A DNA stretch of 63,728 bases, filler included, from Hyphochytrium catenoides (Eukaryota > Protista > Hyphochytriomycota): the NCBI GenBank assembly GCA_900088475.1. It is 10 parts of 10 records of this genome, joined end to end, with 100 filler letters (N's around TTAATTAATTAA, not from the genome) between each part and the next. Parts side by side here need not be neighbours in the genome. Positions count along the whole stretch, not along the records: positions 26,714 to 41,107 come from FLMG01001251.1; 9 more parts are not named here. One strand, given 5' to 3'. The notes under the pieces are model-generated. The model was not told the origin of the DNA. It saw only the letters and a list, made by a program, of their open reading frames with translations, and searched no databases. Shown here piece by piece: positions 24,189 through 41,107 of this stretch. Made by a program: the position numbers and the translations under genes. Numbering within the stretch: the stretch's first letter is position 1; each line of letters opens with the position of its first letter.

Positions 24189-27171
24189 CAGGATCGTTTC
24201 AGCTCCGTCAAACTCAACTGATTACTGCTAGGAACCAGTGGTAGATAACCAGAAGGTTAGGCTTATCAGTAACCGGAATGACATTGAGAACCTCTTCTAA
24301 GATTATTACAGGGCATTTACAGTAGGAAGTGCTTAGAAAGTGCTCATGGACAATCGGCTCCCTTAGCAGTCTCTTCATAGTCTTTTTCATTATATCTTGT
24401 AAAGGGTAGAAGTTCTACAGCGGAGATCTAGAGAAGAAGAGAAGGGCAATGTTCTTCTCAGAGAGAGGCCCTCATAGTTTCTTCTTGTAGACCAAACGAA
24501 TCTGCCTGCTAAGTATGGCCCGGTGTGGTGTCACCCAGACTGAAGACGGAAACTGAAAAATCAGCGGGGTTTTGCCCTGCTACTACTACTATTTATGTCA
24601 GTTTGTCATCATTCGCTTGGCCTTACAAAGTGTTGTTGTCCTGCCAAAGAGAGGACGGGGTTGTAAGAAGAAGGAGGTCTGCTATCGCGAACAACGAGTA
24701 GTCAAAGTCTTCTAGCAGCAGCAGCAGACTACGAGAGAAGATAGACGAGTCAGATGAGACTTGCCATAATAAAGGCAACGAAGAGGAGAAGATACAAACG
24801 ATTCTCGACCACGACAGGAAGGAGGGCAAAGAACTGCAAAATTATAGTTGACAGCAAGCAGCTGCATTATTGATCCACGTCGAGTCTAATAAGTTGGAGT
24901 CCTCTCTTTTATAAGTAGTGCTCTTAAGGTTGCGCGGGGGAGGAGGGAGAGGATTAACTTCTGTGAGGGATGCTTCTAGAAGAAGACAGTGGTGTGACTC
25001 TGAGGGCCTCCTCCTGAAGAAGTACTGGGCGTGGACGACTCCTCTGTAAAAGCTGTGTTTGCCAGTTTGTTAGAGCTGCTTGGATCAGTTAGTCTCACAA
25101 ATACTGCTCGCCTGACAGGCGCACTTGTGACTCAGAAAAAAGGCTTGTTCCAGAATGAGCAGTCTCTGAGTAACAATGCAGAGCAGAGACGGTCAGCTCA
25201 CTCTTCCAACAGAAGCCTTAGCTGAGAGAAGGTCGTGACTTGCTACTAGTAGGCTCAGCATAGGACTGGTAAAGGACGGAGCGATAATGACACACTCCAT
25301 CCACCAACAAAGACCCTTTGGGTGCTGTTTAGAAATCCAGCTCTTCCCTTTCTTCTTCATTGAAGCTAAGGAAAAGAGGTACGTATACCACTGGACTTCC
25401 ACAAGAAGGAAGTGTATAATAAGTCTCAAAGCCGCTGCTCAGCTAGAGATGATAGTCTACGGGCATCTTTCACTCTCTAGGTAGGAAGAAGAAGAGACGG
25501 AGGTGAAAAGGCGCAGGCCCTCAATCATCAGATGTCATCAATGGACTTAAGGTGTAGGACTCCTAGACTGCTCCATCCAGAAGCGTTGACAATGATAGAG
25601 GCACAACTCCCATCCATCGCAGCAGCAGATAGAGAGTTACGTCCCTTGTGCACATGATGGCATCAAGGCATCAAGGTTTACTCATAGAACGAGGAATAAA
25701 GGCAAATTCTATGGGGAAGGAAAGGCTGCTGGTGTGTTGTTGCGGGCATGAATGACGTCAGTTGCGCGGGGCGGTACCGGAAATGTCAATTATCCCGTCA
25801 ATCAATCCTTTATTTACTTTGATGAATAAAGACTGTCAATTTGGCGTGTTCTCCTTGAGATTTACACGGAAAGTGTAGTGCAGCTGACATTAAATTTGGC
25901 AAGTATTTGACAGGTTGGCGTGGTGGCGGGTTGGGTGATGTGAGGATCAGATGGGGTTGTGGGCAGTTAGAGGCACACACAGGCGAGGGATCAGAAGCGG
26001 CATGGTGGTGATGACCGGACACTTTCTGGTACACTTCCTCCGCCGGCTGCTGTGTCTTCAATCTTCAAGGAGATAGATGGCCCGTGTGTCGTTCACTAGC
26101 AGCAGCCGCGCTATCTCCTGCTTGACGCAAGCAGCAACACCTTGTCCTTCCCCGGCATCTCGGTTGCTGCTATCGCGCGGTACAGCCCAGACGACCAAAC
26201 CGAAGCGAAGCACGGTGGTACCAGTGTAGCACAACCAATTTCGGAAGCACAAGTCCATCGTTGGTCGGACTGGTTGTTAGTGGTCTGGTTATAAAAGTGG
26301 GCGGCAAACAAGCGTCCGTTAAGCTGCCAGAGCAAACAGTCCAAGCTGGTATAATGACGGTATGCGCTTCACCTACTAGTTGCAATGGCATCTGTGCGAC
26401 TCTAACTCGAGACAACTGTCCTTCAATAACAGATGAGAGACATGGTGGATGCTACCAACGAGACTTATGAGAGCTTTCGCTTGCAATATGGTGAAGCGCC
26501 GATGCTGGTACTGACTCTATCACTCTTCCTTTTAGAGCTGTTTGATGCGCTTACGTCACCTCTTTCTGTGACAAGAACCACACACAGCAACAGTTCCAGA
26601 TCGAGCTATCATCNNNNNNNNNNNNNNNNNNNNNNNNNNNNNNNNNNNNNNNNNNNNTTAATTAATTAANNNNNNNNNNNNNNNNNNNNNNNNNNNNNNN
26701 NNNNNNNNNNNNNATTTTAAAGATAAAGTTTCGTTTACAGTGTCCCGGTGCAGTTGCTCTAAGAACTAGTAGTAGAGCCACCAGGAGGAAGATAATAACA
26801 GCAGCAAACGACCCCACGAAAACCTCTTCGTCGTCCTCCCCACAACCCCATAGTCTTGTTCTTGGATTATTTTCGGGTACGTCTAATTCGTACTAAATAA
26901 CGAAAGTAGATCGAATATGGACCCTCAACGTATTTATTCTCGGTAGTACGTGCCGAATTTAATCCGTTTCACATCTCTTCCTGTATTTCACTGAGAAGAG
27001 GAAGAAGGAGACCTCAAACAAGAGATTGGCCGAATGTAAAACTTCCTGCTCTAGAATTAGCACTACTGTTTTATACCTGGAGCTGGCCTAGTAGTAGCAG
27101 AGGAAAGAGAGACGGACCGCGAAGGAATGGTGAGAGAAAGAGCAGAAGAAAGCTAACAAGCATGCACTGGG

Positions 27172-27228
<57 letters not shown>

Positions 27229-28117
27229 CGGAGAGACAGCCGCTAGCCGGATGACCCGAGCGGGAAAGGAGAAGTGAAAGAGAGAGAAAGAAAGGACAGG
27301 AGAAGTGCGGAGCAGGGAGGAACAACTCTCACCGTCAGTAGTCAGTACATTCTTCTAGGGAAAGAAGGAGGGAGGAAGAAGGTCTATCCTTATGGTACCG
27401 TGGCGTGGCATGACAATCTTCCTAACATACGCTATGGCGGTGGAGGAGGAGGCACCGCTGTCTGAGCTGCTAAGGATTTGGCGCCTGGGGCTGGGACATT
27501 AGCTCATCAACAGTGGAGAGTCTGTGTCGTTCCCAGAAGGGTTCTCTCCAAGCCGTATGATGAGCCGCCAACAGGGAAAGGAAGCGAGGAAGATGGGGCT
27601 AGACCGTACACTACGTAGCTAGAGATGCTGTTTATGGATTGAAAGAAGATGAGGGCAGCGGTTCTAAGAGAAAGTTCCATAAGGAAAGAAACAGACGACA
27701 GCCAAGCCTGTTGCCTTCTTATCAGCAGAGTGGTCCCACATGGCTACTTCCGCTTTTATTGCTTCTTCCTTGCCAGGACAAACGGTAAGAAAGAGTAGCC
27801 AGAAGAGAAGGTACAGAGATCTAAGACACTTTCTATGGCGCATTCTCCTCGTTTTAACTCGGAAATGAGTGTTTCCCCTTATCTTCCTCCCCGCCAACAA
27901 GCAGGAGAAAGGATTGAAAGGAACTCTCTCTCATTCGCTCGTGGAGACCATAGAAGCGTCCTGAAGAAGACATGATGACAGAGGACGAGGGACCTCAATC
28001 GCCTTCAAACTTATCGTCCACAGGAGTCTTCATAGTCAGATCTCCAGCTTACTTCTTGCATCGCCAACGCAATTCCTCGCTTCCCCCGGCCAGTAGCTGC
28101 CTGATAGCTTATCGACG

Positions 28118-28849
28118 ATGAAGCTCCAGAACCCCATTAACCTTCTGTCATTTGTTCTTCTGAGTACTTGCGCCACATTGACAGCGGCAGCAGAAGCAAG
28201 CGCCCCATTCCTTGCAGCTGCAACTTCAGGAGGCAGCTCAGAATTATTGGCCCCGTCAAGAGCTACTCCGGACTGTGTTTGCCCTGAATATTACTCTCCT
28301 GTGTGCTACGAGGGCAAGACATACGGCAATAAGGTTTGTCTCCAGTGCTCCTTGGCGGGACAAGTGGATGAGACAAAGATCATTCCAGGAGAATGCCCAG
28401 AGAAAGCCATCCCTCTGCTGCCAGTCGGAGGGCGAAAAGGAGGCAGCTCAGAATTATTGGCCCCGTTAAGAGCTACTCCGGGCTGTGCTTGCCCTGAATA
28501 TTACTCTCCTGTGTGCTACGAGGGCAAGACGTACTCTAATAAGGTTTGTCTCCAGTGCTCCTTGGCGGGACAAGTGGATGAGACGAAGATCATTCCGGGA
28601 GAATGCCCAGAGGAGGCCATCCCTCTGCTGCCAGTCGGAGGGCGAAATGGGAGGTTTGGCCCGAGACGATGCATGTGCCCTATGGACTATAAGCCTGTTT
28701 GCTATCAGGCGCAGACCTATGGCAACGTTTGCCAGTTAATGTGCTATGTTGACGGTCCAGAGAAGGAAAAACGTCGCCGTGAAGCGATTAGCGGCCCATG
28801 TGTTGGACCGAATAGCCCATTGTCACCAGTCCGTCAATCATTTGCCTAA
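28118..28849 (+). CDS. Secreted three-domain Kazal-type serine protease inhibitor (intronless)
   Basis: Signal peptide MKLQNPINLLSFVLLSTCATLTAAA; three domains of pattern CxCPxxYxPVC....TY.N..C..C...G.C. Domains 1 and 2 are a 210-bp near-identical tandem duplication (28229 and 28439). Confidence 0.92.
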   Translation: MKLQNPINLLSFVLLSTCATLTAAAEASAPFLAAATSGGSSELLAPSRATPDCVCPEYYSPVCYEGKTYGNKVCLQCSLAGQVDETKIIPGECPEKAIPLLPVGGRKGGSSELLAPLRATPGCACPEYYSPVCYEGKTYSNKVCLQCSLAGQVDETKIIPGECPEEAIPLLPVGGRNGRFGPRRCMCPMDYKPVCYQAQTYGNVCQLMCYVDGPEKEKRRREAISGPCVGPNSPLSPVRQSFA

Positions 28850-28923
28850 TTAGAACTATGACTCTGTCGAATAGTAGCGACGGCAACTGAAGAGCGAGAG
28901 ATTAACCAGGAGGGAAAGAGGAC

Positions 28924-28966
<43 letters not shown>

Positions 28967-29301
28967 TTGACTGAGCTCCTGTTGATATGCCCTACCAAGA
29001 ATGGGAAGGCTTACTTAGAAGAATCCCTGCCCGTCTAGCGTTCCTCTAAAGATGTGCACCTATCATTTGCTCTTCAGCTGTGGCTCACTCCTCTCTACTC
29101 TCCTCATCCTTGCACAACCGGTGGGCCCTCCTATTATAGATGATAGAGGCCTCAGTTATAAGGACAGAAGGACATTCAGGACGAGCTGAGTGTGTCGTCC
29201 TCTTTGTTCGCTGGCTTTTCTCTCTCCTCACGCTCTACTAGGAGATCGAAGACTCAAACGGCCAGCACTCTTTGAACTCTCCCCTGCCTTTGCCCTGTAT
29301 T

Positions 29302-29336
<35 letters not shown>

Positions 29337-29616
29337 CTCTCTCTTCCTCAATCTTTCTCTCTCTCTCTCTCTCTCCTACATCCGTACATTTGGTCTTATC
29401 CGCGGAACAGCGTTCTCTTCCGCGGAAAAGTAGGCCATAAGCAGAGCGAAGAATCACATACGAGGAGAACTAGTTATTAGAGGGAGAGGCAGTAGAACGG
29501 GGTGATAAGAGAGACTTCTAGGACGTCTGGAAGGCAGCAATGGCTATCGACGAGAGAGAGAAAGCATGTCATTAGCGCTGTACAAAGTCTATTAACTTAG
29601 AGGATGTGATAGATGG

Positions 29617-30078
29617 TTACATGGCAGGCCAACTCTCTGTCCCGCACTCTCCTTCTCTAGCTTCTCTGATCATCTTCTCTCTCTCCTGCTGGTCTGTGAC
29701 GCCACAGGTGAGCCTGCAGGTATTGGTATAGGTCGTGCCCTTGTAGCAGACAGGGCGATAAAGAGCTGGGCAGATGCAGGGAAGTGGACGAGGCAAGGAA
29801 GGCTCCTCCTCCTCCGCCACGAGCTCCTCCGGCTCAGGGCAGATTCCTTCTTTGACTTCTTTCTCATTGACATCCTCTTCGGCGCAGCGTAAGCAGGCGC
29901 GGTTAGAGTACGTCTTTCCTCTGTAGCAGACAGGGTCGAAGACAGCGGTGCAGACACAGTTCTGCTGTTGCAGTCCACGGAGGCTGGAAGTAGCTGCTGC
30001 CTCTGGAGCCGCAGCAGCGGATGCTGCACATGCAGCGAGGGCTGAGGCCACGAACAAGAAAGGCGTTGTGAGCTTCAT
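29617..30078 (-). CDS. Secreted two-domain Kazal-type serine protease inhibitor (intronless)
   Basis: Signal peptide MKLTTPFLFVASALAACAASAAA from ATG 30078; domains CVCTAVFDPVCYRGKTYSNRACLRC..GIC and CICPALYRPVCYKGTTYTNTCRLTC..GEC. Confidence 0.92.
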   Translation of the reverse strand: MKLTTPFLFVASALAACAASAAAAPEAAATSSLRGLQQQNCVCTAVFDPVCYRGKTYSNRACLRCAEEDVNEKEVKEGICPEPEELVAEEEEPSLPRPLPCICPALYRPVCYKGTTYTNTCRLTCGVTDQQEREKMIREAREGECGTESWPAM

Positions 30079-32533
30079 ATTGCCTTGGTAGCTTGTAGGA
30101 AATGATAGCAAGGTCAAGCTCTGGTGGAAAGGGGCGTTGGCCGTTAAGATAACGAAGACTGCAGGAGAGAAGGGCTTGCTACCGAGGTGGGAGAGGATGA
30201 TGATGTTGCTTGGGCTGGGCTTTGGAAGTTGATGACTGAAGACTTGTGCCCTGACTTCCTCAGCAGCATCCAACTCAGCTCCCTTCTCTCAATCGCGCTT
30301 AATTCTCTTCCTTTCTGCATGAGATGTCCGTCCAGTGGCAGACAGCGACAGAGACAACTCTTCTTGGCACTGGCAAACAACGCGAGAAAGAGAGTAACAA
30401 AAGGCTGTTGGCTTGTCGGTCATGAGGGATGGGCAGAGCGAGGAGGACGAGAGCGACAACCAGTGCTAGATCTCTCGAACAGTTCCTTCAGGCAAAGTGG
30501 CTGTTATTAGCCGCCTCACCCTTGGTCATTCCGAACGGGAAACATCGGACGTAAAGCTGGAAGAGAGACAAGGAAAGGGAAGAAAAGATAGCTCAGCAGA
30601 TTTCCCAGGTCGCGGGAGCTGCGTAAGGCTCATCAATCCTAAGATCTCTCTTAGGCCAGCAGCCATCCGCAGAGGAGGACAATAGGCAGAGAGTTCTACA
30701 GAGGAGGAGAAGGATCGTAGCTGTTCACGTTCTTAGTCTTCTCTAAGTGATAGTAGAACGACTGGTTCGTGCACCTCTCTTCTGTCTCTTCTCTCTCTCT
30801 CTCTCTCTCTCTCGTGCACTCCTTCTCTCTAGCTCGCACACTGGCTCTGGCTCTTGGAACTCCTTTCTCTTCTATCTCACTTCCTTCTCTCTTTGTCTCA
30901 CTCCTCGGTCTTCGATCGTGCCTGTCTCTCAGGTCCTTGAGCAAACCAGACGGAGCTCTTTCTGCGGCACTCTGTCTCTTCAAACTCTCTTGCTCTTCCT
31001 TCTCTTCATTCCTCATTTGGCTAAGAAAAAGCATCTGTCATTCTTCGATGGAGATCTGACTCTTTCTTAATGTCCCAGATCTTTGATGTCTCATTTTTTT
31101 TTTGCTTACTTGTCACCACCTGCCTGCCAGATAGACAGACGATCGGCTGCGTGACCTCTTCTTCATTGATCATGCACTTTCTAAGAGAGACGACTGAAGA
31201 GGCCAGAGAAAGTGACGGCTCTATGGGAGCCCCGGCCCGTCGTTCCTAAAGAGTATGCGCCTAGGAAATCCAGTCGTTGCCAGCTAAAGAACGGAATGAA
31301 GCCCGTACTCTGAGGGTTATGAGGGACACTATCACGGCAGGAGGAAGAGTAATGCAGCTTTCGATAGGGAAGCTGCATGGCTCGGACGCACGCCGGTGGA
31401 CGCCAAAGTCGTAGAGACAAAGGAGAATCCTTTGCGCGGAGAATGTTTGGAGGTCCTGTCGCACAAACGTATCGCAGAAGAGGCGGAGGAAGATCCTTAA
31501 AACTCTTCATAGCTTGCTATAGCCAGCGCTTGACAGCGCGGGCTTGCCGACGTCGAGGGAATTTAGGTAGACAGCGCTTGTTGTCTCCCTCTTGCTTTGT
31601 TCAATGTATGACACTTTCCTGCCCTCCTCTTCCCGATAGCGCTCGTCGCGCGAGTCAACCTGCTGCCCCTGGATCCTATCTGGCCATTGCGCTGGGTTGG
31701 TTTCAAGGAAAGGACCGCAAGCGGCCAGGCTGCCGCATTGCTGGTTGACGCTGACTCTCACCGCGGCCATGACACCTTCTATTGGCCATGCTTACCCGCA
31801 AACGCGGGCGTTCATGTGTCACTTTACATCTTTCCCCTGTACTTGAAGGGGGCGACCAACAAGGCAGCGTGCTCATCATGCGGGCGAGCCACCGAAGGAA
31901 ACTACCTGCCTCAGAAAAGCATGTCTCCTCAGCTGTGGCAGCAGTGGTCATAAGATGGTCAACAAGGAAGGCTGTCGCTTTCAATAGGTAGACCGTCGAT
32001 CTCGAGCTTTTGCTGGTAGCCAAAGGTTCCAAATCTCCCTCACTGAGAGGCATGTGACTCTATCTACTTGGTCCCAGTGGATTAGGGATACTGGCGCTTC
32101 TTGACCGTCACTGTGTCCCCTTCAGTGCCCGGTAGATCGTCAATGCCTGACCGAGGACCTTCCCTGAGCTATGTCGCATCATTCTTCAACGTCCGGGTGT
32201 ACCAGTTCCTGACTTCATGGAACTACTAGGATGGAGGGAGACTTGGGCTTGCCATCAGCACGAGAGACGAGGAAAGAGAAAGATTCACAAGTTTACTATT
32301 AGAAGTCACACGTATAAAGTACATTGCTGGTCCTTATCAATGGACAATACAGAGTAATGTACAATTAGCCTTGACATCAGGCACGACTGGACGGATAGAC
32401 TGCGACTGCCATGAGCAGCAGCAGGACAAACGGGTGAGACACAGAGAGACAAAGAGACTATAAAAGCGCCAGAACTCATCGCGCTGAGCATTCGTCGTAG
32501 GACTCTCCCAGGTACGGGGAGAGCTTGCCACTT

Positions 32534-34098
32534 TTAGAAGTGAGAGCGGATTGTGTTCATTGTGATGTGGATGAGGACGCCTGTCAGTATGCCTAGCTTC
32601 TGTTTCCGAGGAACTGAGCGTTCCCATAGCTACCGGAGGCCAGATCAGAGAGCACGAGCGATAGAGAAAGGGAACAATAAAGAAAGAGAGAGAGAGAGAG
32701 ACGAGTTAGCACTCAGCCATCAGGATGCTGCCAGGATATAGTGTCAGAGATGGAAGGCTAGTGAATTTATGAGAGCAACCAAGAGGGCAGTCCAAGAAGG
32801 TAGAGAAAATGGATAGAAACATAGAGGAGTCGCATATCTGGCGCAGAAGGATGGCGATTGCTGGTGCTCTTTGACGTACCCAGAAGAGTAGGATCACGCC
32901 CAGAATGGCGCCCATGAAGACTCCCCATACAAAGTCTAAGATGGAGCCGTCCGCTGCAGGTGCATCGTCGTCATAAGAGGAGAAGTCTATTCTTCTATCG
33001 CTATTTAACGGGCGAACATTGAGGGCAAACTCTGAGTTGGGACCCTGCGCGTCCATCCACTCTTCCTCTACCCTGTAGATTCGCTCTTCAGGTGTCTCTC
33101 CTGTGAAGCAGGGAGATAGGAGGCGCACAGCGCAAGGAGAACAAAGAAGGGAGAGATACAGAAGCACGTAGGTCAGTATCGGAGCAATGACAACCGCAAT
33201 CAGCTAATGCGGTGTACCTTCTCTAGCAGTGTCCTGCTCTAACAACGCTGATATCTGAGGGAAGAAGTAGAGTCGTAGCGCTTGGACTTCTTCCATAGAG
33301 ACATTAGCACTTCGAAGACGGTCAAAGCCTCGTCTGTTATTGTCAGTGCAGGCGTCAGGATCCTAACGAAGGGCGGTAGGAAGGGAAAGAATTTGGATGC
33401 TGCTTAGCTCTCGAACGATATGACACCCGAAGAGTCCATGACTTACGTGCTGGACTACTGTTTGGGGCTGCTGGAGCTTCTCCGAGATGGCGCAGTGGAT
33501 ATATCCTCGGTCTCCGATCTTACATTCAGCCAGAGTGGCGTCATCGCTGGAGAGAAGCTTGCCTTGGTAGATGAGCCGCAGATATTTGCCTATAGCCTCC
33601 GCCTTCAGAGACAAACAAGTCAGTCTCTGTCTTAGACCTTTCCTCTCTTCTTCAACTGTCCCTGTCTTTAGCCCTCTCAAACACCGTCAACCGCCAACCA
33701 GTCTCTCCGGCTCAATCTCCCTTCCCTGTCTCTTCTTTTAGCGGCCTCTCTGCGTACCTTCTTCTGAATAAGAGACTTCAGCTCTGATATAGTGGTCGTG
33801 TCTGTGACGTTGAACTCTAGAGGCACTTCGCTTCTTGTCTTCACGAAGATTCTAAGGTTGTGGCTGTCAGGTTGTGGCTCTACATCTGGTTCTACCGCGT
33901 CTAATGTGCTATCGACCCAAGCCACTCCTGCTGGGTTCTCTAGATCAGGATAGCTGAGGTCTACCTCGCTTGAAGGCACTTTCTGCAAGAGCTGGGCAGC
34001 CCAAGAAGGGTAAGTAAGAGCTATCGGACATCAAAATGAGAGACTAACTAATGACCTTACCGCTGACTGCTCCTCTGACTGGTCAAAGAGCACCATCA
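32534..34098 (-). CDS. Dsc3-like (DUF2407) protein: ubiquitin-like domain, RGFDRL helical region and C-terminal TM pair
   Basis: Exons LRIFVKTRSEVPLEFNVTDTTTISELKSLI | YLRLIYQGKLLSSDDATLAECKIGDRGYIHCAIS | RRGFDRLRSANVSMEEVQALRLYF | EERIYRVEEEWMD..DFVWGVFMGAILGVILLFW | LWERSVPRKQKLGILTGVLIHITMNTIRSHF*. This matches the architecture of DSC E3 ligase subunit 3. Start codon uncertain. Confidence 0.8.
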
Positions 34099-37000
34099 TC
34101 TTCTGTGCGCAGAGGATGTCTCTACTTTCCAAGGTGTACGTACTGGCTATCGAGAGAGTATAAGTGAATGAGCAAGGATAGCCCGTTCGGTCACAGGCCC
34201 TTCCACTTCTGCCCGCCTAGGCTCTGTTGATCTCTGGTGCTGGCCCTAGCTTTCTGGTCGGTGCGGGGAACTTATCTTATGAAACGCTATCTGAGTCTCT
34301 GTATAAGATGAAAAGTGACTGAGNNNNNNNNNNNNNNNNNNNNNNNNNNNNNNNNNNNNCTCTTTCTCTCTCTCTCTCTCTCTCTGCCGTCCCTGTGTCT
34401 CTGTCTCCTGTAAAGGTCATCTTTTGGTCTTGGGCCCAGGTTTTGGCTTTTGGTCGCGGATGTGGAAGATTTCGAGGTGACCAGAGGTCTCACTAAACCA
34501 ATGTCTTCGGGATAGTTACGCCTATCTCTGGAATTAGTACCAACTTATGACACTAAATTTAGAATTCGTTGGGTATTTGATGCTAAAGGGCAAAAGAGAC
34601 GGACCTGTCACTCAACCATTTAATGAAATAGAGGAGGAGAGAGATGGAACAGAGGCTAAAGATATTTTCACAGAGCGAGGTTGTAACATCTGCATAGAAG
34701 ACAGAGAAAGAAGTGGCAAGACAGAATGCAAAGAGAGATCGGGACAAAAGATGCGGCCATAGAAAATGGAAGAATGGCATGACGTTACGAACTTGAAGTG
34801 AGAAAGGACTGAACAGCTCCCTAACTACCTAAACTTAACTAGGGGATACGGTGGTGCTCGACTAACATCGTCGTACAGCTCAGTGTTCTTATCAGAGTCT
34901 CAGATTCTAACCTTGATAGTTTCTACCTGACATCCCCTCGGAGATAAGCAGATAACCAGCAGCAGAAGCAAGACTGTGTTCGAAATCTTCCTCAGAAACT
35001 ATGGAAAGATTGGAGCATTCACTATGTAAAGGACCATATTGTATCTTTCGAAGGTTTCGTGTTGTAATGGGCATGTTAGGAAATATGCAAAAGCTGAGCT
35101 CGTTATGCAGACGAAGGAAGGACAAAGGCGCGGAGCTTCTTCGGATCTCTTTCCAGATGCTGACGAAGCTTCATAATTCATGAGGCAGGAGGCAGGCTCA
35201 GGTGGCGAAAGGAAGCTGGGGCTCAGCTATGAAGGAGTCTGATGGAGTCATATCGCTAAGATGGACGACATTGCGGCTTCCAAGGCCATCAGGCGTAACG
35301 ACGCAGGAAGGATCACCAATGAAGAGCTAAAGATGAAGGGCTGAAGGAAGGAGAATATGTTAAGAGAGGGTGAGGCGGTCGAGAAAGTGCTATTTGATGG
35401 GTCTCTCGTTTTGGCAACACTACGCTCGGGCGCCGTCTGGCCCTCCGAGCAGTAGAGGAACTCCCTAGAACTAGTTACTATGCGCCTGAGGAGCCAGCGA
35501 GTATGTACAATAAACTGGGCCACTAGGGAGGCTCCGATTAAGAGACGACGACCACTGAAAGCGACACAGCAAGCAGCGAAAGGGAGAAAGAGAAAGGGAG
35601 GGGGGGCTTCCTAGTACAATCTCCTTTTTGACAATCCCGTTGCAGAAGAGACCGTATAAGAGGAGGGATGCAGTCTGTCACCTCGTCGTTGATCAAGTTG
35701 GTCCTTTCCCCTCATGCCTTTGATGCATCGAGACACCTATCATGTCCCTTCTAGACTAGGCATTGTTGGAGCTTATCCCCTTTTGGCCTCTCACTGTTAA
35801 CCACGGGGTCTGCTGGTAGCGTGTGAAGGCATGCCCCCATGAATGCTCATCATCAAGAGCACTTTGTCAAATAAAAAGTACTTGCGTTCGTTCAACTATG
35901 GAGAGACAGAAAGAATCCTCTACATTCCTCCCCCTTCGAGAGGACGAGAATACCCTCACGCCCTCATGCCTCACTTACAAGTGCCTGCACAGCAGAGGAG
36001 ATCACTGTCGGCCGGAGCCCCAGAATGGTTCAACGGAATGCGGGGAAGCCATCTCAAGTAGTATCATGTGTCTCCTCATCTGAGGTTGGCGGGTTTAGTA
36101 GCATGGATGAGAGGTGAGGGTAAGTACATGGAGTCTACCGTTAGTTCCAAGCAAGGAGCCAGACCATAGTCGGTCTACCATGCTCACTCGGTCTGCCATG
36201 CACACCTTGTTTGCGAACCATGAATAGAAGAGGTGCTCGAGCTCCGCCTCGGTTCGGCCAGGGTGTGGATCTCAATGAAGGAGAGTCGCGGTCGCAGCCA
36301 GGTAAGTGTTTGATCTGACTGGGTCTGGACACCCTTTCTACAAGTATCTGCACTCCGGTAAGGCCCTGATCTCCTCCTCCCTCCTCCTTCACTTGTCCGA
36401 GTCTTCGCTTTACCCTAAGCCTTCAAGCGTGCTATTACAGAGCCGAATGGTGATTCTTGGCCCGTAAGAGGCCATTCTACTGGTTAATACTGGTTACCAA
36501 CTCAAGCAGCCTTCGTTAGAAGAAGGTCCTGAGCATGCGAAGTAAGCAAATAGCAGAAAAGTAGCCCCCCGGACGGCAAGGAAGAGGCCATTGCTCTGCA
36601 AGAAGAAAGCGGCATAGTAGCACATGAGATAGACCTAACTTACAGCCCTTTTTGCTACTTCTTCTTGGTCGGACCTGACCCCAAGAGTGTCTGCTGGTCC
36701 ACACTGCTCTAGCATAGTGCCAAACCCTGTTGGGCTGGATGGTCGTAGGGGAATTGTGAGGAATGACATTCGTCGTAATAGCTGAGGGTCTACGATCAGG
36801 CGGGGAGCTTTCTTCAATCAAAGAGAATAGCCGAAGTGTGGGGTTGCTAGGTTTCCTGAGCCCGTAGTAGGAGGATGTAGCCTCCCGATCACGTCCAAAG
36901 TAGCTCAGGTCAACACTAGCCTCAGAGCCAGACAAAGATAGTAGCAATAACTCTGACGCTAATGCTGTTGGCCGCGTGGGTCCGCAGCATCTATACTCGT

Positions 37001-38062
37001 TCACTCTTCTTCTCTTCCTTGGCATCTACCTCAGCACAAAGTGCTGTGGAGTTTGGTGTCACCTCACTAGCCTCGTTTCTCCTGCTCCTCCGCAGATCCA
37101 AGCCCTGTGTCATCCAAGGACAACTCAGCCCGTTGCTCTACAGGTAGAGGACCTTGACCTCTGAGACAGCGGGCGAAGGGCGTGGCCTAATACCCAGAAC
37201 GCGAGGCAGTGGCTATAAGCTGTCCCTCATTCTAGAATGAAGATAGCCCACCCCAGTCTCTTGGCCACGAAAATGCAAAAGCCTCCTCGGGGCCAAGCCG
37301 TAGCCTAGCGCTTTGTCAGAACTATCTTCGTATACATTGAAGTGAGCTCCGTGGTGTTCGCTTTCTTGAGCTCGCGCTAAGGGAAGAGAGAGGTCAAACC
37401 TGAGAGAAATGAAACCAACTGAAAGCCATTGCATGATGAGGCTCCACCTACAATCCCCTTATAAGACCCTTGCATGACTCATAAGCTTCCTAGAACTATT
37501 GGGAGGAGACAATGAATGACTTGTGGCTTCGCGTCATGCTCTTCTTCAAGGAGAAATTATGATGGCAAGAGCGGCACGGCCATCGGGCGCGCCAATCACC
37601 TAGAGTTTTTCTATAAACAATCGCCGGCAAGTAGCGGAACGTACAGCACAAGAACTACAGGGAAAGAGAGCCGCAAACGGCAGGAGCTTCGTGATGCTTG
37701 GCTGATCTCTGTTCAGCTGTCAAAAGGGAAGCTTCAAGAGCTCCAGGAAGGGCACCAGGGATCACGCCGACGGGGCAAGCGGATGATGGACAGCCTTCAA
37801 ACAGGCCAAGCAAGCTCGTTCATTATCCCCTTTGTGATGCTAGGCAGAAGGCAGGAGCAGTCTGGCCAGACCGACGGAGCTTCGAAAGACGTAGCGCTCC
37901 TCTTCTCTGGCAGTCGGCAGCCACACCCTTCCTTGGTCAGTGCTACGGCGCGGCACCGGGCACTATGCCCCCTCTGAAGAGGCTTGATCAAGGACTGATC
38001 CCGTTGTGACCCATCGAGCTCCTTAAGTCGGGTGCCAAGAATTGTCGCATCTGCCACTCACA

Positions 38063-41000
38063 ATGCCCAGCAGGGCCACTGTGAATGCATGTCTTGGAGG
38101 GATGGCTGGCCGAGCTTACCACTGTGGGAAATGGACTAAGGCGACCACTGGTAGGATGACATCACGGGCTGTCAGGAGGCCCCACTGCATCAGAGCGTAC
38201 ACCGAGCTCACGAGTCTTTTGGGTTGGAGCTCTACCAGGGAAAGATGCACAGGCCAACGGGTGGACCCATCGAGAGAACTCTGTCAGCGGACATTTGCAA
38301 CAGCACTGGCTAGGACGAAGATGAGAGGCGCCCGTACCTCTGCGCTGCAGCACACGAAGGATTCGCCGGCTACGGATCGAGTTCACTTACCATCAGTTGG
38401 GGCCCTTATTGAACTGATCGCCAAGTATGGCGCTCAGAAAAATATTCGGGCCATTGAGAATGTTTTATACAAGCGCATGCCTGAGGCTGGCGTGGAGCCC
38501 AGCGAGATCATCTGTTCTGAGGTTCTGAAGGCGTACATCAAGGCCGGTAAGCTTGAGNNNNNNNNNNNNNNNNNNNNNNNNNNNNNNNNNNNNNNNNNNN
38601 NNNNNNNNNNNNNNNNNNNNNNNNNNNNNNNNNNNNNNNNNNNNNNNNNNNACAAGCGCATACCAGAGGCTGGTGTGAAGCCCAGTGATATCACCTGCTC
38701 TGAGGTTCTGAAGGCGTACATCAAGGCCGGGGAGCTCGAGAAGGCAGAGACGTTTTTGCGTGACGGAATGCTCTCTTTAGGAGTAAAGCTGAGTGCTACT
38801 CACTTCACCCAGCTCCTGGGAGGCTATGGTTCTCTGGGTAAGTTGCAGGCAATGGAGGAGATCCTGTACAAGCGCATGCCTGAGGCTGGTGTGAAGCCCA
38901 ATGGGATCAGCTGCTCTGAGGTACTGAAGGCGTACATCAAGGCCAGAGACCTCGAGAGGGCAGATGTATTTCTACGTGAGGGAATGCTGTCGCTAGGAGT
39001 AAAGCCAAGTGCTATTCACTTCACCCAGCTCCTGGGAGGCTACGCTTCTGTGGGTAAGTGGCAGGCTATGGAGGACATTCTTTACAAGCGCATGCCTGAG
39101 GCTGGCGTGAAGCCGAATGAGATCACCTGCTCTGAGGTTCTGAAGGCGTACCTAAAGGGTGAACAATTCGAAAGGGCAGAGACATTTCTGCGCGACGAAA
39201 TGCTGTCCCTAGGAGTAAAGCCAAGTGCTTTTCACTTCACCCAGCTCCTGGGAGGCTACGCTTCTGTGGGTAAGTGGCAGGCGGTGGAGGGAATCCTGCA
39301 CAAGCGCATACCTGAGGCTGGTGTGAAGCCGAATGAGATCACCTGCTCTGAGGTTCTGAAGGCGTACCTAAATGGTGAACAATTCGAAAGGGCAGAGACA
39401 TTTCTGCGTGACGAAATGCTGTCGTTAGGAGTAAAGCCAACTGGGTTCCACTTCACCCAGCTCCTGGGAGGCTATGGTTCTGTGGGTAAGTGGCAGGCTA
39501 TGGAGAATATCCTGTACAAGCGCATGCCTGAGGCTGGTGTGAAGCCCAGTGATATCACCTGCTCTGAGGTTCTGAAGGCGTACATCAAGGCCGGTAAGCT
39601 TGAGAGGGCCGAGGCATTTCTACGNNNNNNNNNNNNNNNNNNNNNNNNNNNNNNNNNNNNNNNNNNNNNNNNNNNNNNACAAGCGCATGCCTCAGGCTGG
39701 TGTGAAGCCCAATGATATCATCTGCTCTGAGGTTCTGAAGGCGTACATCAAGGCCGGGGAGCTCGAGAAGGCAGAGACGTTTTTGCGTGACGGAATGCTC
39801 TCGTTAGGAGTAAAGCTGAGTGCTACTCACTTCACCCAGCTCCTGGGAGGCTATGGTTCTCTGGGTAAGTTGCAGGCTATGGAGGAGATCCTGTACAAGC
39901 GCATGCCTGAGGCTGGTGTGAAGCCCAATGGGATCAGCTGCTCTGAGGTTCTGAAGGCGTACATCAAGGCTGGTGAGCTCGAGAGGGCCGAGACATTTCT
40001 GGATGACAGAATGCTGTCACTAGGAATAAAGCCAACTGCTATTCACTTCACCCAGCTTCTGGGAGACTACGCTTCTGTGGGTAAGTGGCAGGCGGTGGAG
40101 GGAATCCTGCACAAGCGCATGCCTGAGGCTGGTGTGAAGCCCAATGAGATCACCCGCTCCGAGCTACTGAAGGCGTACATCAAGGCTGGAGAGCTCGAGA
40201 GGGCAGAGGCATTTCTGCGTGAAGGAATGCTGTCGCTAGGAGTAAAGCCAACTGTTATTCACTTCAACCTGCTCCTAGGAGGCTATGGTTCTGTGGGTAG
40301 GTGGCAGGTTATGGAGGACATTCTTTACAAGCGCATGCCTGAGGCTGGCGTGAAGCCCGACGAGATCAGCTGCTCTGAGGTACTGAAGGCGTACATCAAG
40401 GGTGGAGAGCTCCAGAAGGCAGAGGCATTTCTACGTGACGGAATGCTGTCGCTAGAAGTAAAGCCAAATGCTTTTCACTTTACCCAGCTGCTGGGAGGCT
40501 ACGGTTCGCGGGGTAAGTGGCAGGCTATGGAGGAGATCCTGTACAAGAGAATGCCTGAGGCTGGCGTGAAGCCCGATGAGATCAGCTGCTTGGAGGTACT
40601 GAAGGCGTACACCAAGGCTGGTGAGCTTGAGAGGGCCGAGATATTTCTGCGTGAAGGAATGCTGGCGGTAGGAGTAAAGCCTAATGCTTTCCACTTTACC
40701 CAGCTCCTGGAAGGCTACGGTTCTATGGGTAAGTGGCAGGCTATGGAGGAGATCCTGTACAAGAGAATGCCTGAGGCTGGTGTGAAGCCCAATGGGATCA
40801 GCTGCTCTGAGGTACTGGAGGCGTTTCTCAAGGCCGGTGAGCTGGAGAGGGCAGAGACATTTCTGCGTGACGAAATGCTGTCTCTAGGAGTAAAGCCAGA
40901 TGCTATTCACTTCAACCTGCTCCTGGAAGGCTATGGTTCTGTGGGTAAGTGGCATACAATGGAGGAGATCCTGTGTAAGCGCATGCCTGAGGCTGGTGTG

Positions 41001-41107
41001 AAGCCCGATGAGATTAGCTGGTCTGAGGTACTGAAGGCGTACATTAAGGCGGGAGAGCTCAAAAGGGGCGAGACATTTCTGCGTGAGGGAATGCTGGCGC
41101 TAGGAGG
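38063..41107 (+). CDS. Intronless pentatricopeptide-repeat (PPR) protein built of 216-bp tandem units; 3' end truncated
   Basis: Alternating motifs EITCSEVLKAYIKAGELERAETFLRDGMLSLGVKPx and AIHFTQLLGGYGSVGKWQAMEEILYKRMPEAGVKPx fit the PPR consensus. Unit starts 38654, 38870, 39086, 39302, 39518 (period 216). At least 20 complete motifs are visible. The frame change at 39625-39678 lies in an N gap. Confidence 0.93.

What the first reader, a model, noticed from the sequence alone, without database searches (positions are those of the whole stretch)
38654..41107. TALE-like PPR array: near-identical repeats with recurring variation at the RNA-recognition code residues
Seen: the 216-bp units are highly similar in DNA, yet the last residue of each motif cycles among N/S/T/D and residue 5 of motif B switches T/N. 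The 5th/last pairs in 39681-41107 are A:SS, B:TN, A:ST, B:TN, A:ST, B:ND, A:SN, B:TD, A:LN, B:TN, A:SD, B:ND. The first block has SS, TN, SS, TN, SS, TN, ST, TS. Both N5 motifs pair with a final D. Established: plant PPR code TN/SN=A, TD/SD=G, ND=U. Inference: a natural designer-like PPR, re-programmable by unequal crossover or conversion of homogeneous units, with a purine-rich predicted target roughly xAxAxUAGxAGU. Most natural PPRs have very degenerate repeats, so this could be a rapidly diversifying RNA-recognition family (organelle RNA control, restorer-like, or defence). Other positions also vary, so enrichment at the code sites needs testing.
Basis: partly seen in the sequence, partly recalled or inferred. 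Interest (0 to 1): 0.78.

Follow-up and report, generated by a model that had tools for sequence, protein, structure and literature searches.

The report
Repetitive PPR RNA-binding gene fragment
This is a real but incompletely assembled gene for a pentatricopeptide-repeat (PPR) RNA-binding protein built from at least 13 similar 72-residue units; one of its two RNA-code positions is among the fastest-changing sites, but the pattern is much less clean than the TALE-like picture first proposed.

Summary
A 216-bp unit (72 aa, made of two 36-aa PPR motifs, A and B) is repeated at least 13 times on the + strand from about 38411 to the contig end at 41107. The family call is solid: Pfam and TIGR PPR models pass, the fold model is an alpha-solenoid, and the best solved matches are designer PPRs. 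"Near-identical" overstates it. Units are 77-92% identical in DNA, with one pair at 97%. Motifs are 73% (A) and 81% (B) identical in protein. The last residue of both motifs ranks 1st and 8th of 72 in variability (permutation p=0.004). The 5th residue is not enriched (p=0.46). Nine codons change at about the synonymous rate, so neutral drift at exposed sites is not excluded. Overall pN/pS is 0.44, which indicates a working gene. Both gaps fall inside units. Gap 2 as written (54 N) breaks the frame. Lengths of 127 and 107 nt (+216n) would restore both register and frame. Unit order is unverified. Similar homogeneous PPR arrays turned up among the search hits, in a dinoflagellate, in unnamed metagenome contigs and in bacterial NLR-like proteins. 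This is therefore a new member of a known kind.

The parts
38063..38410 (+). Putative start codon and N-terminal non-repeat region (116 aa), possibly an organelle presequence
   Evidence: It is the first ATG of the ORF that runs into the array. The region has 20 basic against 6 acidic residues, with no acidic residue in the first 46. No PPR unit lies upstream in any frame. The start codon and targeting role are inferred.
38411..38557 (+). First degenerate B-like motif plus the first 29 codons of a unit (p1.2), ending at gap 1
   Evidence: The unit HMM matches 38471-38560 (E 1.3e-14), with a weak match at 38411-38470. p1.2 is 93% identical in DNA to p2.5.
38558..38651 (.). Assembly gap 1 (94 N), inside a unit
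   Evidence: Restoring register needs 127 nt (+216n). As written the gap is in frame but 11 codons short of a unit.
38652..39624 (+). Array block 2: 4.5 units (A and B motifs of units p2.1-p2.4, plus the first half of the p2.5 A motif)
   Evidence: TRF period 216. Pfam PPR_3 E 1.2e-33 and PPR_2 E 3.5e-27. The code pairs are SS TN SS TN SS TN ST TS.
39625..39678 (.). Assembly gap 2 (54 N), inside a unit
   Evidence: As written it shifts the frame by +1. Restoring register and frame needs 107 nt (+216n). A contig from run X1 continues 20 nt past 39624 in frame and in register (table 7).
39679..41107 (+). Array block 3: 6.6 units (13 motifs), cut by the contig end, so the C-terminus is unknown
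   Evidence: TRF period 216. Pfam PPR_3 E 3e-46, PPR_2 E 2.4e-40 and TIGR00756 E 9.4e-63. AF2 mean pLDDT is 86 with regular helix pairs. The Foldseek top hit is 5i9f dPPR-U10, E 3.7e-13. The code pairs are SS TN ST TN ST ND SN TD LN TN SD ND.

Best explanation
This is the 5' two-thirds or less of a nuclear gene of an unidentified eukaryote, encoding a long PPR protein without a PLS pattern. After a basic N-terminal region of about 116 residues, the protein consists of a 72-residue unit repeated at least 13 times. Each unit holds two 36-residue PPR motifs of different subtype. Motif A has S at the 5th position. Motif B has T or N at the 5th position and a conserved GKW.

The array probably grew by unequal crossing-over of the two-motif unit, and short conversion or duplication tracts keep parts of it alike. 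Purifying selection holds the scaffold.

By analogy with solved PPR-RNA complexes, the solenoid should bind single-stranded RNA one nucleotide per motif through the 5th and last residues. Under the plant code, the visible motifs read a purine-rich, mostly A tract followed by U A G ? A G U. The last residue of both motifs, the residues just after it, and the 2nd residue of motif B change about as fast as synonymous sites. Specificity is therefore free to drift or is being diversified.

What is shown: the repeat anatomy, PPR membership, the fold model, the constraint, and the uneven spread of variation. What is inferred: RNA binding, the target string, organelle targeting, and the crossover mechanism.
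For: - Period-216 arrays without indels.
- 970 stop-free codons across the three pieces.
- PPR profiles pass their cut-offs by a wide margin.
- The best solved-structure sequence matches are designer PPRs and PPR10, in residue-level register.
- The AF2 model has pLDDT 86, and all top Foldseek hits are PPR proteins.
- pN/pS among units is 0.44, bootstrap 95% CI 0.32-0.60.
- The last residues rank 1st and 8th of 72 codons in entropy (p=0.004). The a-priori set of 2nd/5th/last gives p=0.02 and 0.009.
- 22 of 23 fifth residues and 23 of 23 last residues belong to the canonical code alphabet.
- A 228-nt tract, 38695-38922 against 39722-39949, has 2-3 mismatches and is flanked by about 80-85% identity. 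Motif-level mosaics are also present: p2.3B/p3.2B are 95% identical while p2.3A/p3.2A are 81%.
- Unit-specific read contigs sit at about the depth of the unique flank in two samples, with no mismatches in X2 (table 8).
- The code assignments TN, SN and TS = A, SS and ST = weak A, TD and SD = G, and ND = U come from PMC6468296.
Against: - No RNA run holds the locus, so expression is unknown.
- The C-terminus is missing, and the start codon is only the first ATG of the ORF.
- Unit order rests on an assembly that broke twice at the same unit position. The read contigs I could lay are at most 229 nt within the array and cannot link units.
- The 5th residue shows no excess variation.
- Four of the nine fast codons lie away from the motif start where the code residues sit, in the turn or second-helix part of the motif by position. 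Plain relaxed constraint therefore explains much of the pattern.
- Whether the plant code holds in this organism is not known.
- Half of the motifs carry SS or ST, which bound only weakly in designer-PPR assays.
Confidence: 0.6

Rival explanations
1. The gene is the same, but the code-site variation is neutral. A young tandem array drifts at weakly constrained, exposed positions, and the last residue is simply one of these. The protein binds A-rich or generic RNA with low specificity, or serves as a structural PPR, for example in a ribosome or polymerase complex. Nothing is being 're-programmed'.
For: - Nine codons, not two, run at 1.0-1.5 times the synonymous rate. They include sites in the turn and second-helix part of the motif (idx 33, 38, 61, 69).
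- The 5th residue is conserved (p=0.46).
- S, N and D at the last position are linked by transitions only (AGT, AAT, GAT).
- Per-site ratios of 1.1-1.45 are not above neutrality.
- Many motifs carry SS or ST, which are weak binders.
Against: - Five of the nine fast codons fall in the eight codons from the last residue to residue 3, the stretch holding two of the three code positions (post hoc hypergeometric p=4e-4).
- In other homogeneous PPR arrays found here, the 5th and/or last residue is again among the more variable columns (P0111, P0123, P0183, P0184, P0104; weaker in P0164).
- Glycine, which is also one transition away from S and D, never appears at the last position in 23 motifs.
Confidence: 0.3
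2. The ordered array is partly an assembly construct. The units are real, but their number and order, and hence the code string, are wrong, because near-identical stretches were collapsed, duplicated or mis-joined during scaffolding.
For: - Both post-gap pieces start at exactly the same unit position, in the most conserved stretch.
- The flanks of the two gaps resemble each other. p1.2/p2.5 are 93% identical and p2.1/p3.1 are 97%, with 228 nt almost identical.
- Gap lengths as written do not fit the register.
- Read contigs contain unit variants absent from the window: loose ends at 39537, 39881 and 39916, and joints at 39435>40264 and 40288>40512. Summed word depth over conserved stretches is 5-100 times the flank.
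- Window base 40003 (A) is G in both runs (table 3).
Against: - Unit-specific contigs lie at about the flank's depth: 22-54 against 30 in X1, and 223-639 against 382 in X2. In X2 they match the window exactly (table 8).
- The register-restoring gap sizes (127 and 107 nt) are close to the estimates (94 and 54).
- The contig entering gap 2 continues in frame.
- This rival concerns order and copy number only. It does not touch the per-site statistics.
Confidence: 0.35
3. It is a decaying pseudogene or a satellite-like repeat that merely keeps an open frame.
For: There is no expression evidence. The gene is truncated by the contig end. No close homologue exists among 1.84 billion representatives.
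Against: The three pieces hold 970 codons without a stop, while the other frames and the opposite strand are closed. pN/pS is 0.44, with an upper bootstrap bound of 0.60. The structural core residues of the motif are invariant. There are no indels among units.
Confidence: 0.05

Closest known systems
Designer / consensus PPR proteins (dPPR-U10 and relatives, PDB 5i9f, 5i9g, 5i9h, 5i9d; cPPR 5orm, 4wn4; dPPR10 6een)
   Same: These are the best sequence matches among solved structures (E 7e-62 to 1e-35) and the best fold matches. They share the helix-hairpin solenoid. The residues at the 5th and last positions align one to one. The repeats are much more alike than in ordinary natural PPRs.
   Different: Identity to them is only 27-31%. 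The motifs are 36 aa, not 35, with one extra residue at the start of the second helix. Two alternating motif subtypes form a 72-aa unit. The repeats differ at many non-code sites.
Restorer-of-fertility-like (RFL) P-class PPR genes of flowering plants
   Same: These are PPR genes in which base-recognising residues show high diversity, and in which unequal crossing-over and gene conversion add, remove and shuffle motifs (PMC5075784).
   Different: There is no close kinship: the plant PPRs in the word-indexed search were 20-30% identical. RFL diversity is seen between paralogues and alleles in gene clusters. Here I could only compare repeats within one gene. The 5th residue is not variable here. 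Selection was not demonstrated.
Multi-repeat 'SACEK' PPRs of dinoflagellates and other algae with complex plastids (review PMC12787238; example hit P0164, Symbiodinium sp.)
   Same: Both have runs of consecutive, very similar PPR motifs. P0164 shows 88% self-identity at lag 70. They share the pattern G-x-W-Q ... M-P-E/A-A-G-V-x-P-D/N-x-I-S. Identity to the window is 33% over 433 residues. Trp sits at motif position 17 in motif B.
   Different: The defining SACEK at positions 9-13 is absent. The window has KAYIK in motif A and GGYGS in motif B. The motifs are 36 aa, and the A and B motifs are only 28% identical to each other.
Maize PPR10 (PDB 4m57, 4m59), a natural P-class PPR with a solved RNA complex
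   Same: The sequence match is E 2.5e-51 over more than 320 residues, and the fold match is E 1.4e-10. It is the reference for one-motif-one-nucleotide binding through residues 5 and 35.
   Different: By established knowledge, not tested here, PPR10 repeats are degenerate; the 244 PPR hits I sampled (PPR10 not among them) have a median best self-identity of 0.28. The window reaches 0.78-0.82.
NLR-type proteins with highly internally conserved repeat sensors: fungal HNWD genes (my own recollection) and bacterial STAND conflict proteins (PMC10907252, abstract seen)
   Same: From my own knowledge of the family, not read here, the evolutionary mode is the same: similar tandem repeats, variation focused on a few positions, and reshuffling by unequal recombination. 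P0111 and P0123, found here, are PPR versions of this architecture.
   Different: The window protein shows no NTPase or effector domain in the part available, has a presequence-like N-terminus, and is eukaryotic.

Membership tests
PPR proteins (Pfam clan TPR; PF01535, PF13041, PF13812; TIGR00756) | Tandem helix-hairpin motifs of about 35 aa that match the PPR profiles above the curated cut-offs | tested here: met
   Block 3 scores PPR_3 155.8 bits (cut-off 25), PPR_2 136.8 (30), PPR 81.3 (25) and TIGR00756 204.7 (20). Block 2 also passes.
PPR proteins | Right-handed alpha-solenoid fold like solved PPRs | tested here: met
   The AF2 single-sequence model has mean pLDDT 86.3 and 26 regular helices. 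Foldseek ranks 1-22 are all PPR proteins, with 5i9f best at E 3.7e-13. Global TM is only 0.3-0.5; I attribute this to superhelix pitch, which was not tested.
PPR proteins | Polar code residues at the 5th (N/S/T) and last (D/N/S/T) positions | tested here: met
   The 5th position holds S in 12 of 13 A motifs (one L), and T in 8 and N in 2 of 10 B motifs. The last position holds S, T, N or D in 23 of 23 motifs. The register is confirmed by alignment to dPPR.
PPR proteins | Sequence-specific binding of single-stranded RNA | not testable with these tools
   This needs EMSA or RNA Bind-n-Seq with recombinant protein.
PPR proteins | Import into mitochondria or plastids | tested here: inconclusive
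   The N-terminal 116 aa are rich in R, S, T and A, with no acidic residue in the first 46. The start codon is unverified, no predictor was available, and the organism is unknown.
P-class PPR (as opposed to PLS class) | Only P-type motifs, no P-L-S triplets and no E/DYW extension | tested here: inconclusive
   There is no 31-32 aa S motif and no triplet period. The period is two motifs of 36 aa each. The C-terminus is cut off at 41107, so C-terminal domains cannot be excluded.
TALE-like architecture (used as an analogy) | Repeats nearly identical except at the specificity residues | tested here: not met
   Mean motif identity is 73% (A) and 81% (B). Nine codons are fast, of which only three are code sites. 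By contrast, P0111 meets this test: only positions 5, 18 and last vary.
RFL-type rapidly evolving PPRs | Excess nonsynonymous change at the base-recognising residues | tested here: inconclusive
   The last residue is enriched (p=0.004) and the 5th is not (p=0.46). The combined a-priori set gives p=0.02 and 0.009. Per-site ratios of 1.1-1.45 are not distinguishable from neutrality.
RFL-type rapidly evolving PPRs | Membership of the angiosperm RFL clade; clustered paralogues | tested here: not met
   No plant PPR in the word-indexed search is more than about 30% identical, and no representative is above 37%.
SACEK-type multi-repeat PPRs | Ser-Ala-Cys-Glu-Lys at motif positions 9-13 | tested here: not met
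   Positions 9-13 read KAYIK (A) and GGYGS (B). The definition is taken from PMC12787238.

The most novel reading that the evidence does not exclude
The locus is a naturally re-programmable RNA binder. A scaffold evolving in concert is reshuffled by unequal recombination of 72-residue units. Its specificity-determining residues (the last, the 2nd, and to a lesser degree the 5th) are kept diverse by selection. The code string and unit number differ between strains and among hidden paralogues, tracking a changing organellar or foreign RNA target. That would be a protist counterpart of plant restorer-like PPRs, with repeats regular enough to serve as a natural 36-residue design scaffold.
Probability: 0.15. 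Interest if true: 0.7.

Novelty: new member of a known kind. Interest (0 to 1): 0.35.

Why it matters
If the array really evolves by shuffling regular units with variable code residues, it would show that programmable PPR recognition arose naturally outside plants. It would also offer a second natural scaffold (36-aa motifs in an A/B pair) for RNA-targeting tools. On the present evidence it is mainly a well-behaved example of a wider, little-described class: PPR proteins with homogeneous repeats. Among 244 PPR hits retrieved here, 15 others reach 60% or more self-identity over 216 residues, and in several of these the 5th and/or last residue is among the most variable columns. That class, especially its bacterial NLR-like members, may deserve a study of its own.

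Tried and rejected
- **Close relatives.** The word-indexed protein search with block 3 gave only 20-32% identical PPRs and no self hit. The exhaustive search of 1.84 billion representatives gave nothing above 37% identity. An exact-pattern scan of metagenome contigs with the most conserved 29-mer found nothing.\n- **Organism identity.** Run names are coded. The Kazal neighbour found only distant fish ovoinhibitors. The Dsc3-like exon found nothing. Exact-protein look-ups of the Kazal ORF and of a 62-aa unit fragment found no contig. There are no tRNA or Rfam hits in the piece. The Atlas search returned only generic protist PPR clusters. A PLS class pattern was rejected because there are no S motifs.
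Full report
**Anatomy.** The usable piece is 26714-41107. N runs lie at 34324-34359, 38558-38651 (94 N) and 39625-39678 (54 N). Tandem Repeats Finder reports two arrays of period 216 without indels: 38652-39621 (4.5 copies) and 39679-41106 (6.6 copies). An ORF enters the array from 38042, with its first ATG at 38063. The three pieces 38042-38557, 38654-39622 and 39681-41105 together give 970 codons without a stop, while the other frames and the opposite strand are closed. A profile built from the ten complete units finds a partial unit at 38471-38557 and a weak, degenerate motif at 38411-38470. It finds nothing else in any frame of the piece. The array therefore starts about 250 bp upstream of the finding and runs off the contig end. 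The C-terminus is unknown.

**Gaps, tested first.** Counting from the unit start (the K of KRMPEAGVKP), 107 nt of a unit precede gap 2, and the sequence resumes 2 nt before the next unit start. Register requires 107 nt (+216n), which would also keep the frame. The 54 N as written shift the frame by +1. That is why the ORF list shows the block-2 frame running into nonsense after the gap. Gap 1 needs 127 nt (+216n). Its 94 N happen to keep the frame but leave the unit 11 codons short. The needed sizes are close to the estimates.

Contigs of two public DNA runs of the same species were laid on 37900-41107 (3,208 letters). One contig of run X1 continues 20 nt beyond 39624, and this reads on in frame and in register as the next residues of a unit (table 7). 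Continuity is therefore plausible but not shown.

Both post-gap pieces begin at the identical unit position, inside the most conserved stretch. The flanks of the two gaps also resemble each other: p1.2/p2.5 are 93% identical and p2.1/p3.1 are 97%. A 228-nt tract (38695-38922 against 39722-39949) carries only 2-3 mismatches before identity drops to 76-91% per 54-nt window, mostly 80-87%. This is what a recent internal duplication or conversion tract would look like. It is also exactly where an assembler would fail.

**What the reads add.**
- Unit-specific contigs lie at about the depth of the unique flank. In X1 they are at 22-54 against 30, and in X2 at 223-639 against 382.
- In X2 these contigs match the window without a mismatch. 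The individual units are therefore real, single-copy sequences in two samples (table 8).
- X1 differs by a few SNPs. Three lie in the N-terminal region. One changes Q to L next to a 5th residue, at 40486.
- Window base 40003 is G in both runs.
- Contigs also carry unit variants that are not in the window. These show as loose ends after 39537 and 39916 and before 39881, and as two joints with foreign letters.
- Summed word depth over conserved stretches is 5-100 times the flank.
- The tool warns that this depth is not a copy number. It still shows that more units exist, in the gaps, beyond the contig end, or at other loci.
- The contigs are too short (229 nt at most inside the array) to confirm unit order.

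**Family.** Pfam PPR_3, PPR_2, PPR and PPR_1, and TIGR00756, all pass their cut-offs by a wide margin in both blocks. Against solved structures, the best sequence matches are the designer proteins dPPR-U8C2, U8A2, U8G2 and U10 (E 7e-62 to 2e-55), followed by maize PPR10 (E 2.5e-51). The printed alignment fixes the register. Our motif has one extra residue near the start of the second helix, hence 36 aa. A single-sequence AF2 model has mean pLDDT 86.3 and a regular series of helix pairs. Its Foldseek hits are PPR proteins throughout, with 5i9f best.

Each unit holds two motifs. Motif A runs from ..ITCSEVLKAY.. to ..GVKP-x. Motif B runs from ..IHFTQLLGGYGSVGKW.. to ..MPEAGVKP-x. A and B are 28% identical to each other.

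**The observation.** 'Near-identical' is too strong:
- Units are 77-92% identical in DNA, with 97% for p2.1/p3.1.
- 57% of nucleotide columns are invariant.
- A motifs average 73% protein identity and B motifs 81%.

The two N5 motifs share the same double change (AAC CTG for ACC CAG) and the following D. They are probably one event that was copied, not independent recurrences.

**Is variation concentrated at the code sites?** I aligned the 13 units by codon and computed entropy and Nei-Gojobori nonsynonymous and synonymous differences per codon. Unit index (idx) counts codons 1-72 from the unit start.

| Set tested | Codons (idx) | Result |
|---|---|---|
| Last residues | 47, 11 | entropy ranks 1 and 8 of 72; permutation p=0.004 |
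| 5th residues | 16, 52 | ranks 46 and 27; p=0.46 |
| 2nd residues | 13, 49 | one invariant, one rank 6 |

Overall pN/pS is 0.44, with a bootstrap 95% CI of 0.32-0.60. The array is therefore under purifying selection. Nine codons run at 1.0-1.5 times the synonymous rate: idx 11, 12, 14, 33, 38, 47, 49, 61 and 69. Five of these lie in the eight codons from the last residue to residue 3. That stretch holds two of the three a-priori code positions (last and 2nd). The post hoc hypergeometric p is 4e-4. By their position in the motif the other four lie in the turn or second helix.

The enrichment is therefore real but modest. It concerns the last residue and its neighbours, not the 5th. Per-site ratios near 1.1-1.45 cannot separate diversifying selection from loss of constraint. 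The alphabet argument is also weak. S (AGT), N (AAT) and D (GAT) are connected by transitions only, so drift would visit the same residues. The absence of G (GGT) in 23 motifs is the only hint of a filter. The permutation test also treats related units as independent.

**Predicted target.** According to designer-PPR assays, TN, SN and TS recognise A, SS and ST give smeared A binding, TD and SD recognise G, and ND recognises U (PMC6468296, read). Block 2 then reads a run of eight A or weak-A positions. Block 3 reads a A a A a U A G ? The ? is an LN motif with no known specificity. The string is an inference resting on three things: the plant code, an unverified unit order, and two motifs hidden in each gap.

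**Context among other PPRs.** No protein among 1.84 billion representatives is more than 37% identical. The word-indexed search gave only 20-32%. The unit is a new sequence type. Homogeneous PPR arrays as such are not unique, however. For 244 retrieved PPR hits I computed the best self-identity over any 216 residues at lags 28-119. The median is 0.28, the window scores 0.78-0.82, and 15 other proteins reach 0.6 or more.

These include:
- a Symbiodinium protein, P0164, with 88% self-identity at lag 70 and 33% identity to the window;
- two proteins from unnamed contigs (P0183 and P0184; P0184 is also held by NCBI) and the metagenomic P0104;
- two proteins, P0111 and P0123, with N-terminal CHAT or TIR domains, a central region I read as an NTPase (not among the Pfam hits), and 32-aa PPR repeats. 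P0111 sits next to an integrase gene on a 17,970-bp ENA contig. The N-terminus of P0123 matches Thoeris ThsB-type TIR.

In most of these arrays the 5th and/or last residue is among the more variable columns; in P0164 only the last is, and modestly. In P0111 the only variable columns are the 5th, position 18 and the last. It also shows what a truly TALE-like PPR looks like, and the window array is not that clean. A recent review notes runs of consecutive conserved 'SACEK' PPR motifs in dinoflagellates and related algae (PMC12787238). The window's motif B shares the G-x-W-Q and M-P-E-A-G-V pattern with these but lacks SACEK itself.

**Mechanism proposed.** Shown: a constrained PPR solenoid gene made of amplified two-motif units, with mosaic similarity between units. 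Inferred:
- growth and partial homogenisation by unequal crossing-over and conversion, as described for restorer-like PPR genes (PMC5075784);
- one-motif-one-nucleotide binding of a long, purine-rich single-stranded RNA;
- import into an organelle, suggested by a basic N-terminus free of acidic residues.

I put about 0.6 on this overall reading. I put about 0.15 on the stronger claim that selection keeps the code residues diverse and that the locus is being re-programmed between strains.

**Verdict.** The feature is a genuine PPR gene with unusually regular repeats. It is a new member of a known kind and of moderate interest. The main caveats are the broken assembly, the missing 3' end, the unknown organism and the lack of expression data.

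Noticed in passing
L001:2285-5746 (protein P0111); also protein P0123: These are probably prokaryotic NLR-like proteins, carrying an N-terminal CHAT (P0111) or ThsB-like TIR (P0123) domain, a central region I read as an NTPase (not among the Pfam hits), and 10-14 PPR repeats of 32 aa. In P0111 the repeats are identical except at the 5th residue (N/S), position 18 (E/Q) and the last residue (D/N), which is a true repeat-variable-diresidue pattern. P0111 lies next to a phage-type integrase gene. They look like candidate defence proteins with a sensor built from PPR repeats.
   Followed up: partly
proteins P0164, P0183, P0184, P0104, P0117, P0154 (hits): Other natural PPR or PPR-like proteins have very homogeneous repeats, with 0.8-1.0 self-identity over 216 aa. 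They include a Symbiodinium protein with a 70-aa double unit, and a Closterium gene model with 25 identical 93-aa units that may be an annotation or assembly artefact. In P0183, P0184 and P0104 the 5th and last residues are among the most variable columns.
   Followed up: partly
window 28118-28849 (+) and 29617-30273 (-): Two neighbouring genes encode secreted proteins with Kazal-type protease-inhibitor domains (Pfam PF00050). The first contains a 210-bp internal tandem duplication at 94% identity (28228-28647). Both ORFs begin with a hydrophobic, signal-peptide-like stretch (my reading of the translations; no predictor run). The closest database relatives are only distant (33-40% identical fish ovoinhibitors).
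   Followed up: partly
window 32706-33988 (-): Three ORF fragments on the minus strand match ubiquitin-like and Dsc3 (DSC E3 ligase subunit 3) N- and C-terminal domains. This is probably one gene split by introns. No close homologue was found for the C-terminal exon.
   Followed up: partly
window 40003: The window has A here (codon GAT, Asp, at unit position 36 of unit p3.2). All contigs of both public runs have G (GGT, Gly). This is either an error in the assembly or a strain difference.
   Followed up: no
window 39537, 39881, 39916 (read contigs): Contigs of the public runs leave the window sequence at these places and continue with other letters. For example, after the conserved GCTGG some continue ATTGCAGCTGAAGTTTGAC. 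These are unit variants, or the end of the array, and are not present in the window.
   Followed up: no
window 38837-40944, nine sites: Nine of the units carry an in-frame GGTAAGT (the codons for G-K-W), a perfect splice-donor-like heptamer. The hexamer GTAAGT occurs only 3 times in the other 11.7 kb of the piece. Splicing to the next in-register CAG would break the frame, so this is probably coincidental to the G-K-W codons.
   Followed up: partly
window 27174-27236, 28926-28964, 29302-29376, 30775-30813: AG/GA and CT/TCTC microsatellites of 20-32 copies lie in the intergenic DNA around the Kazal genes.
   Followed up: no
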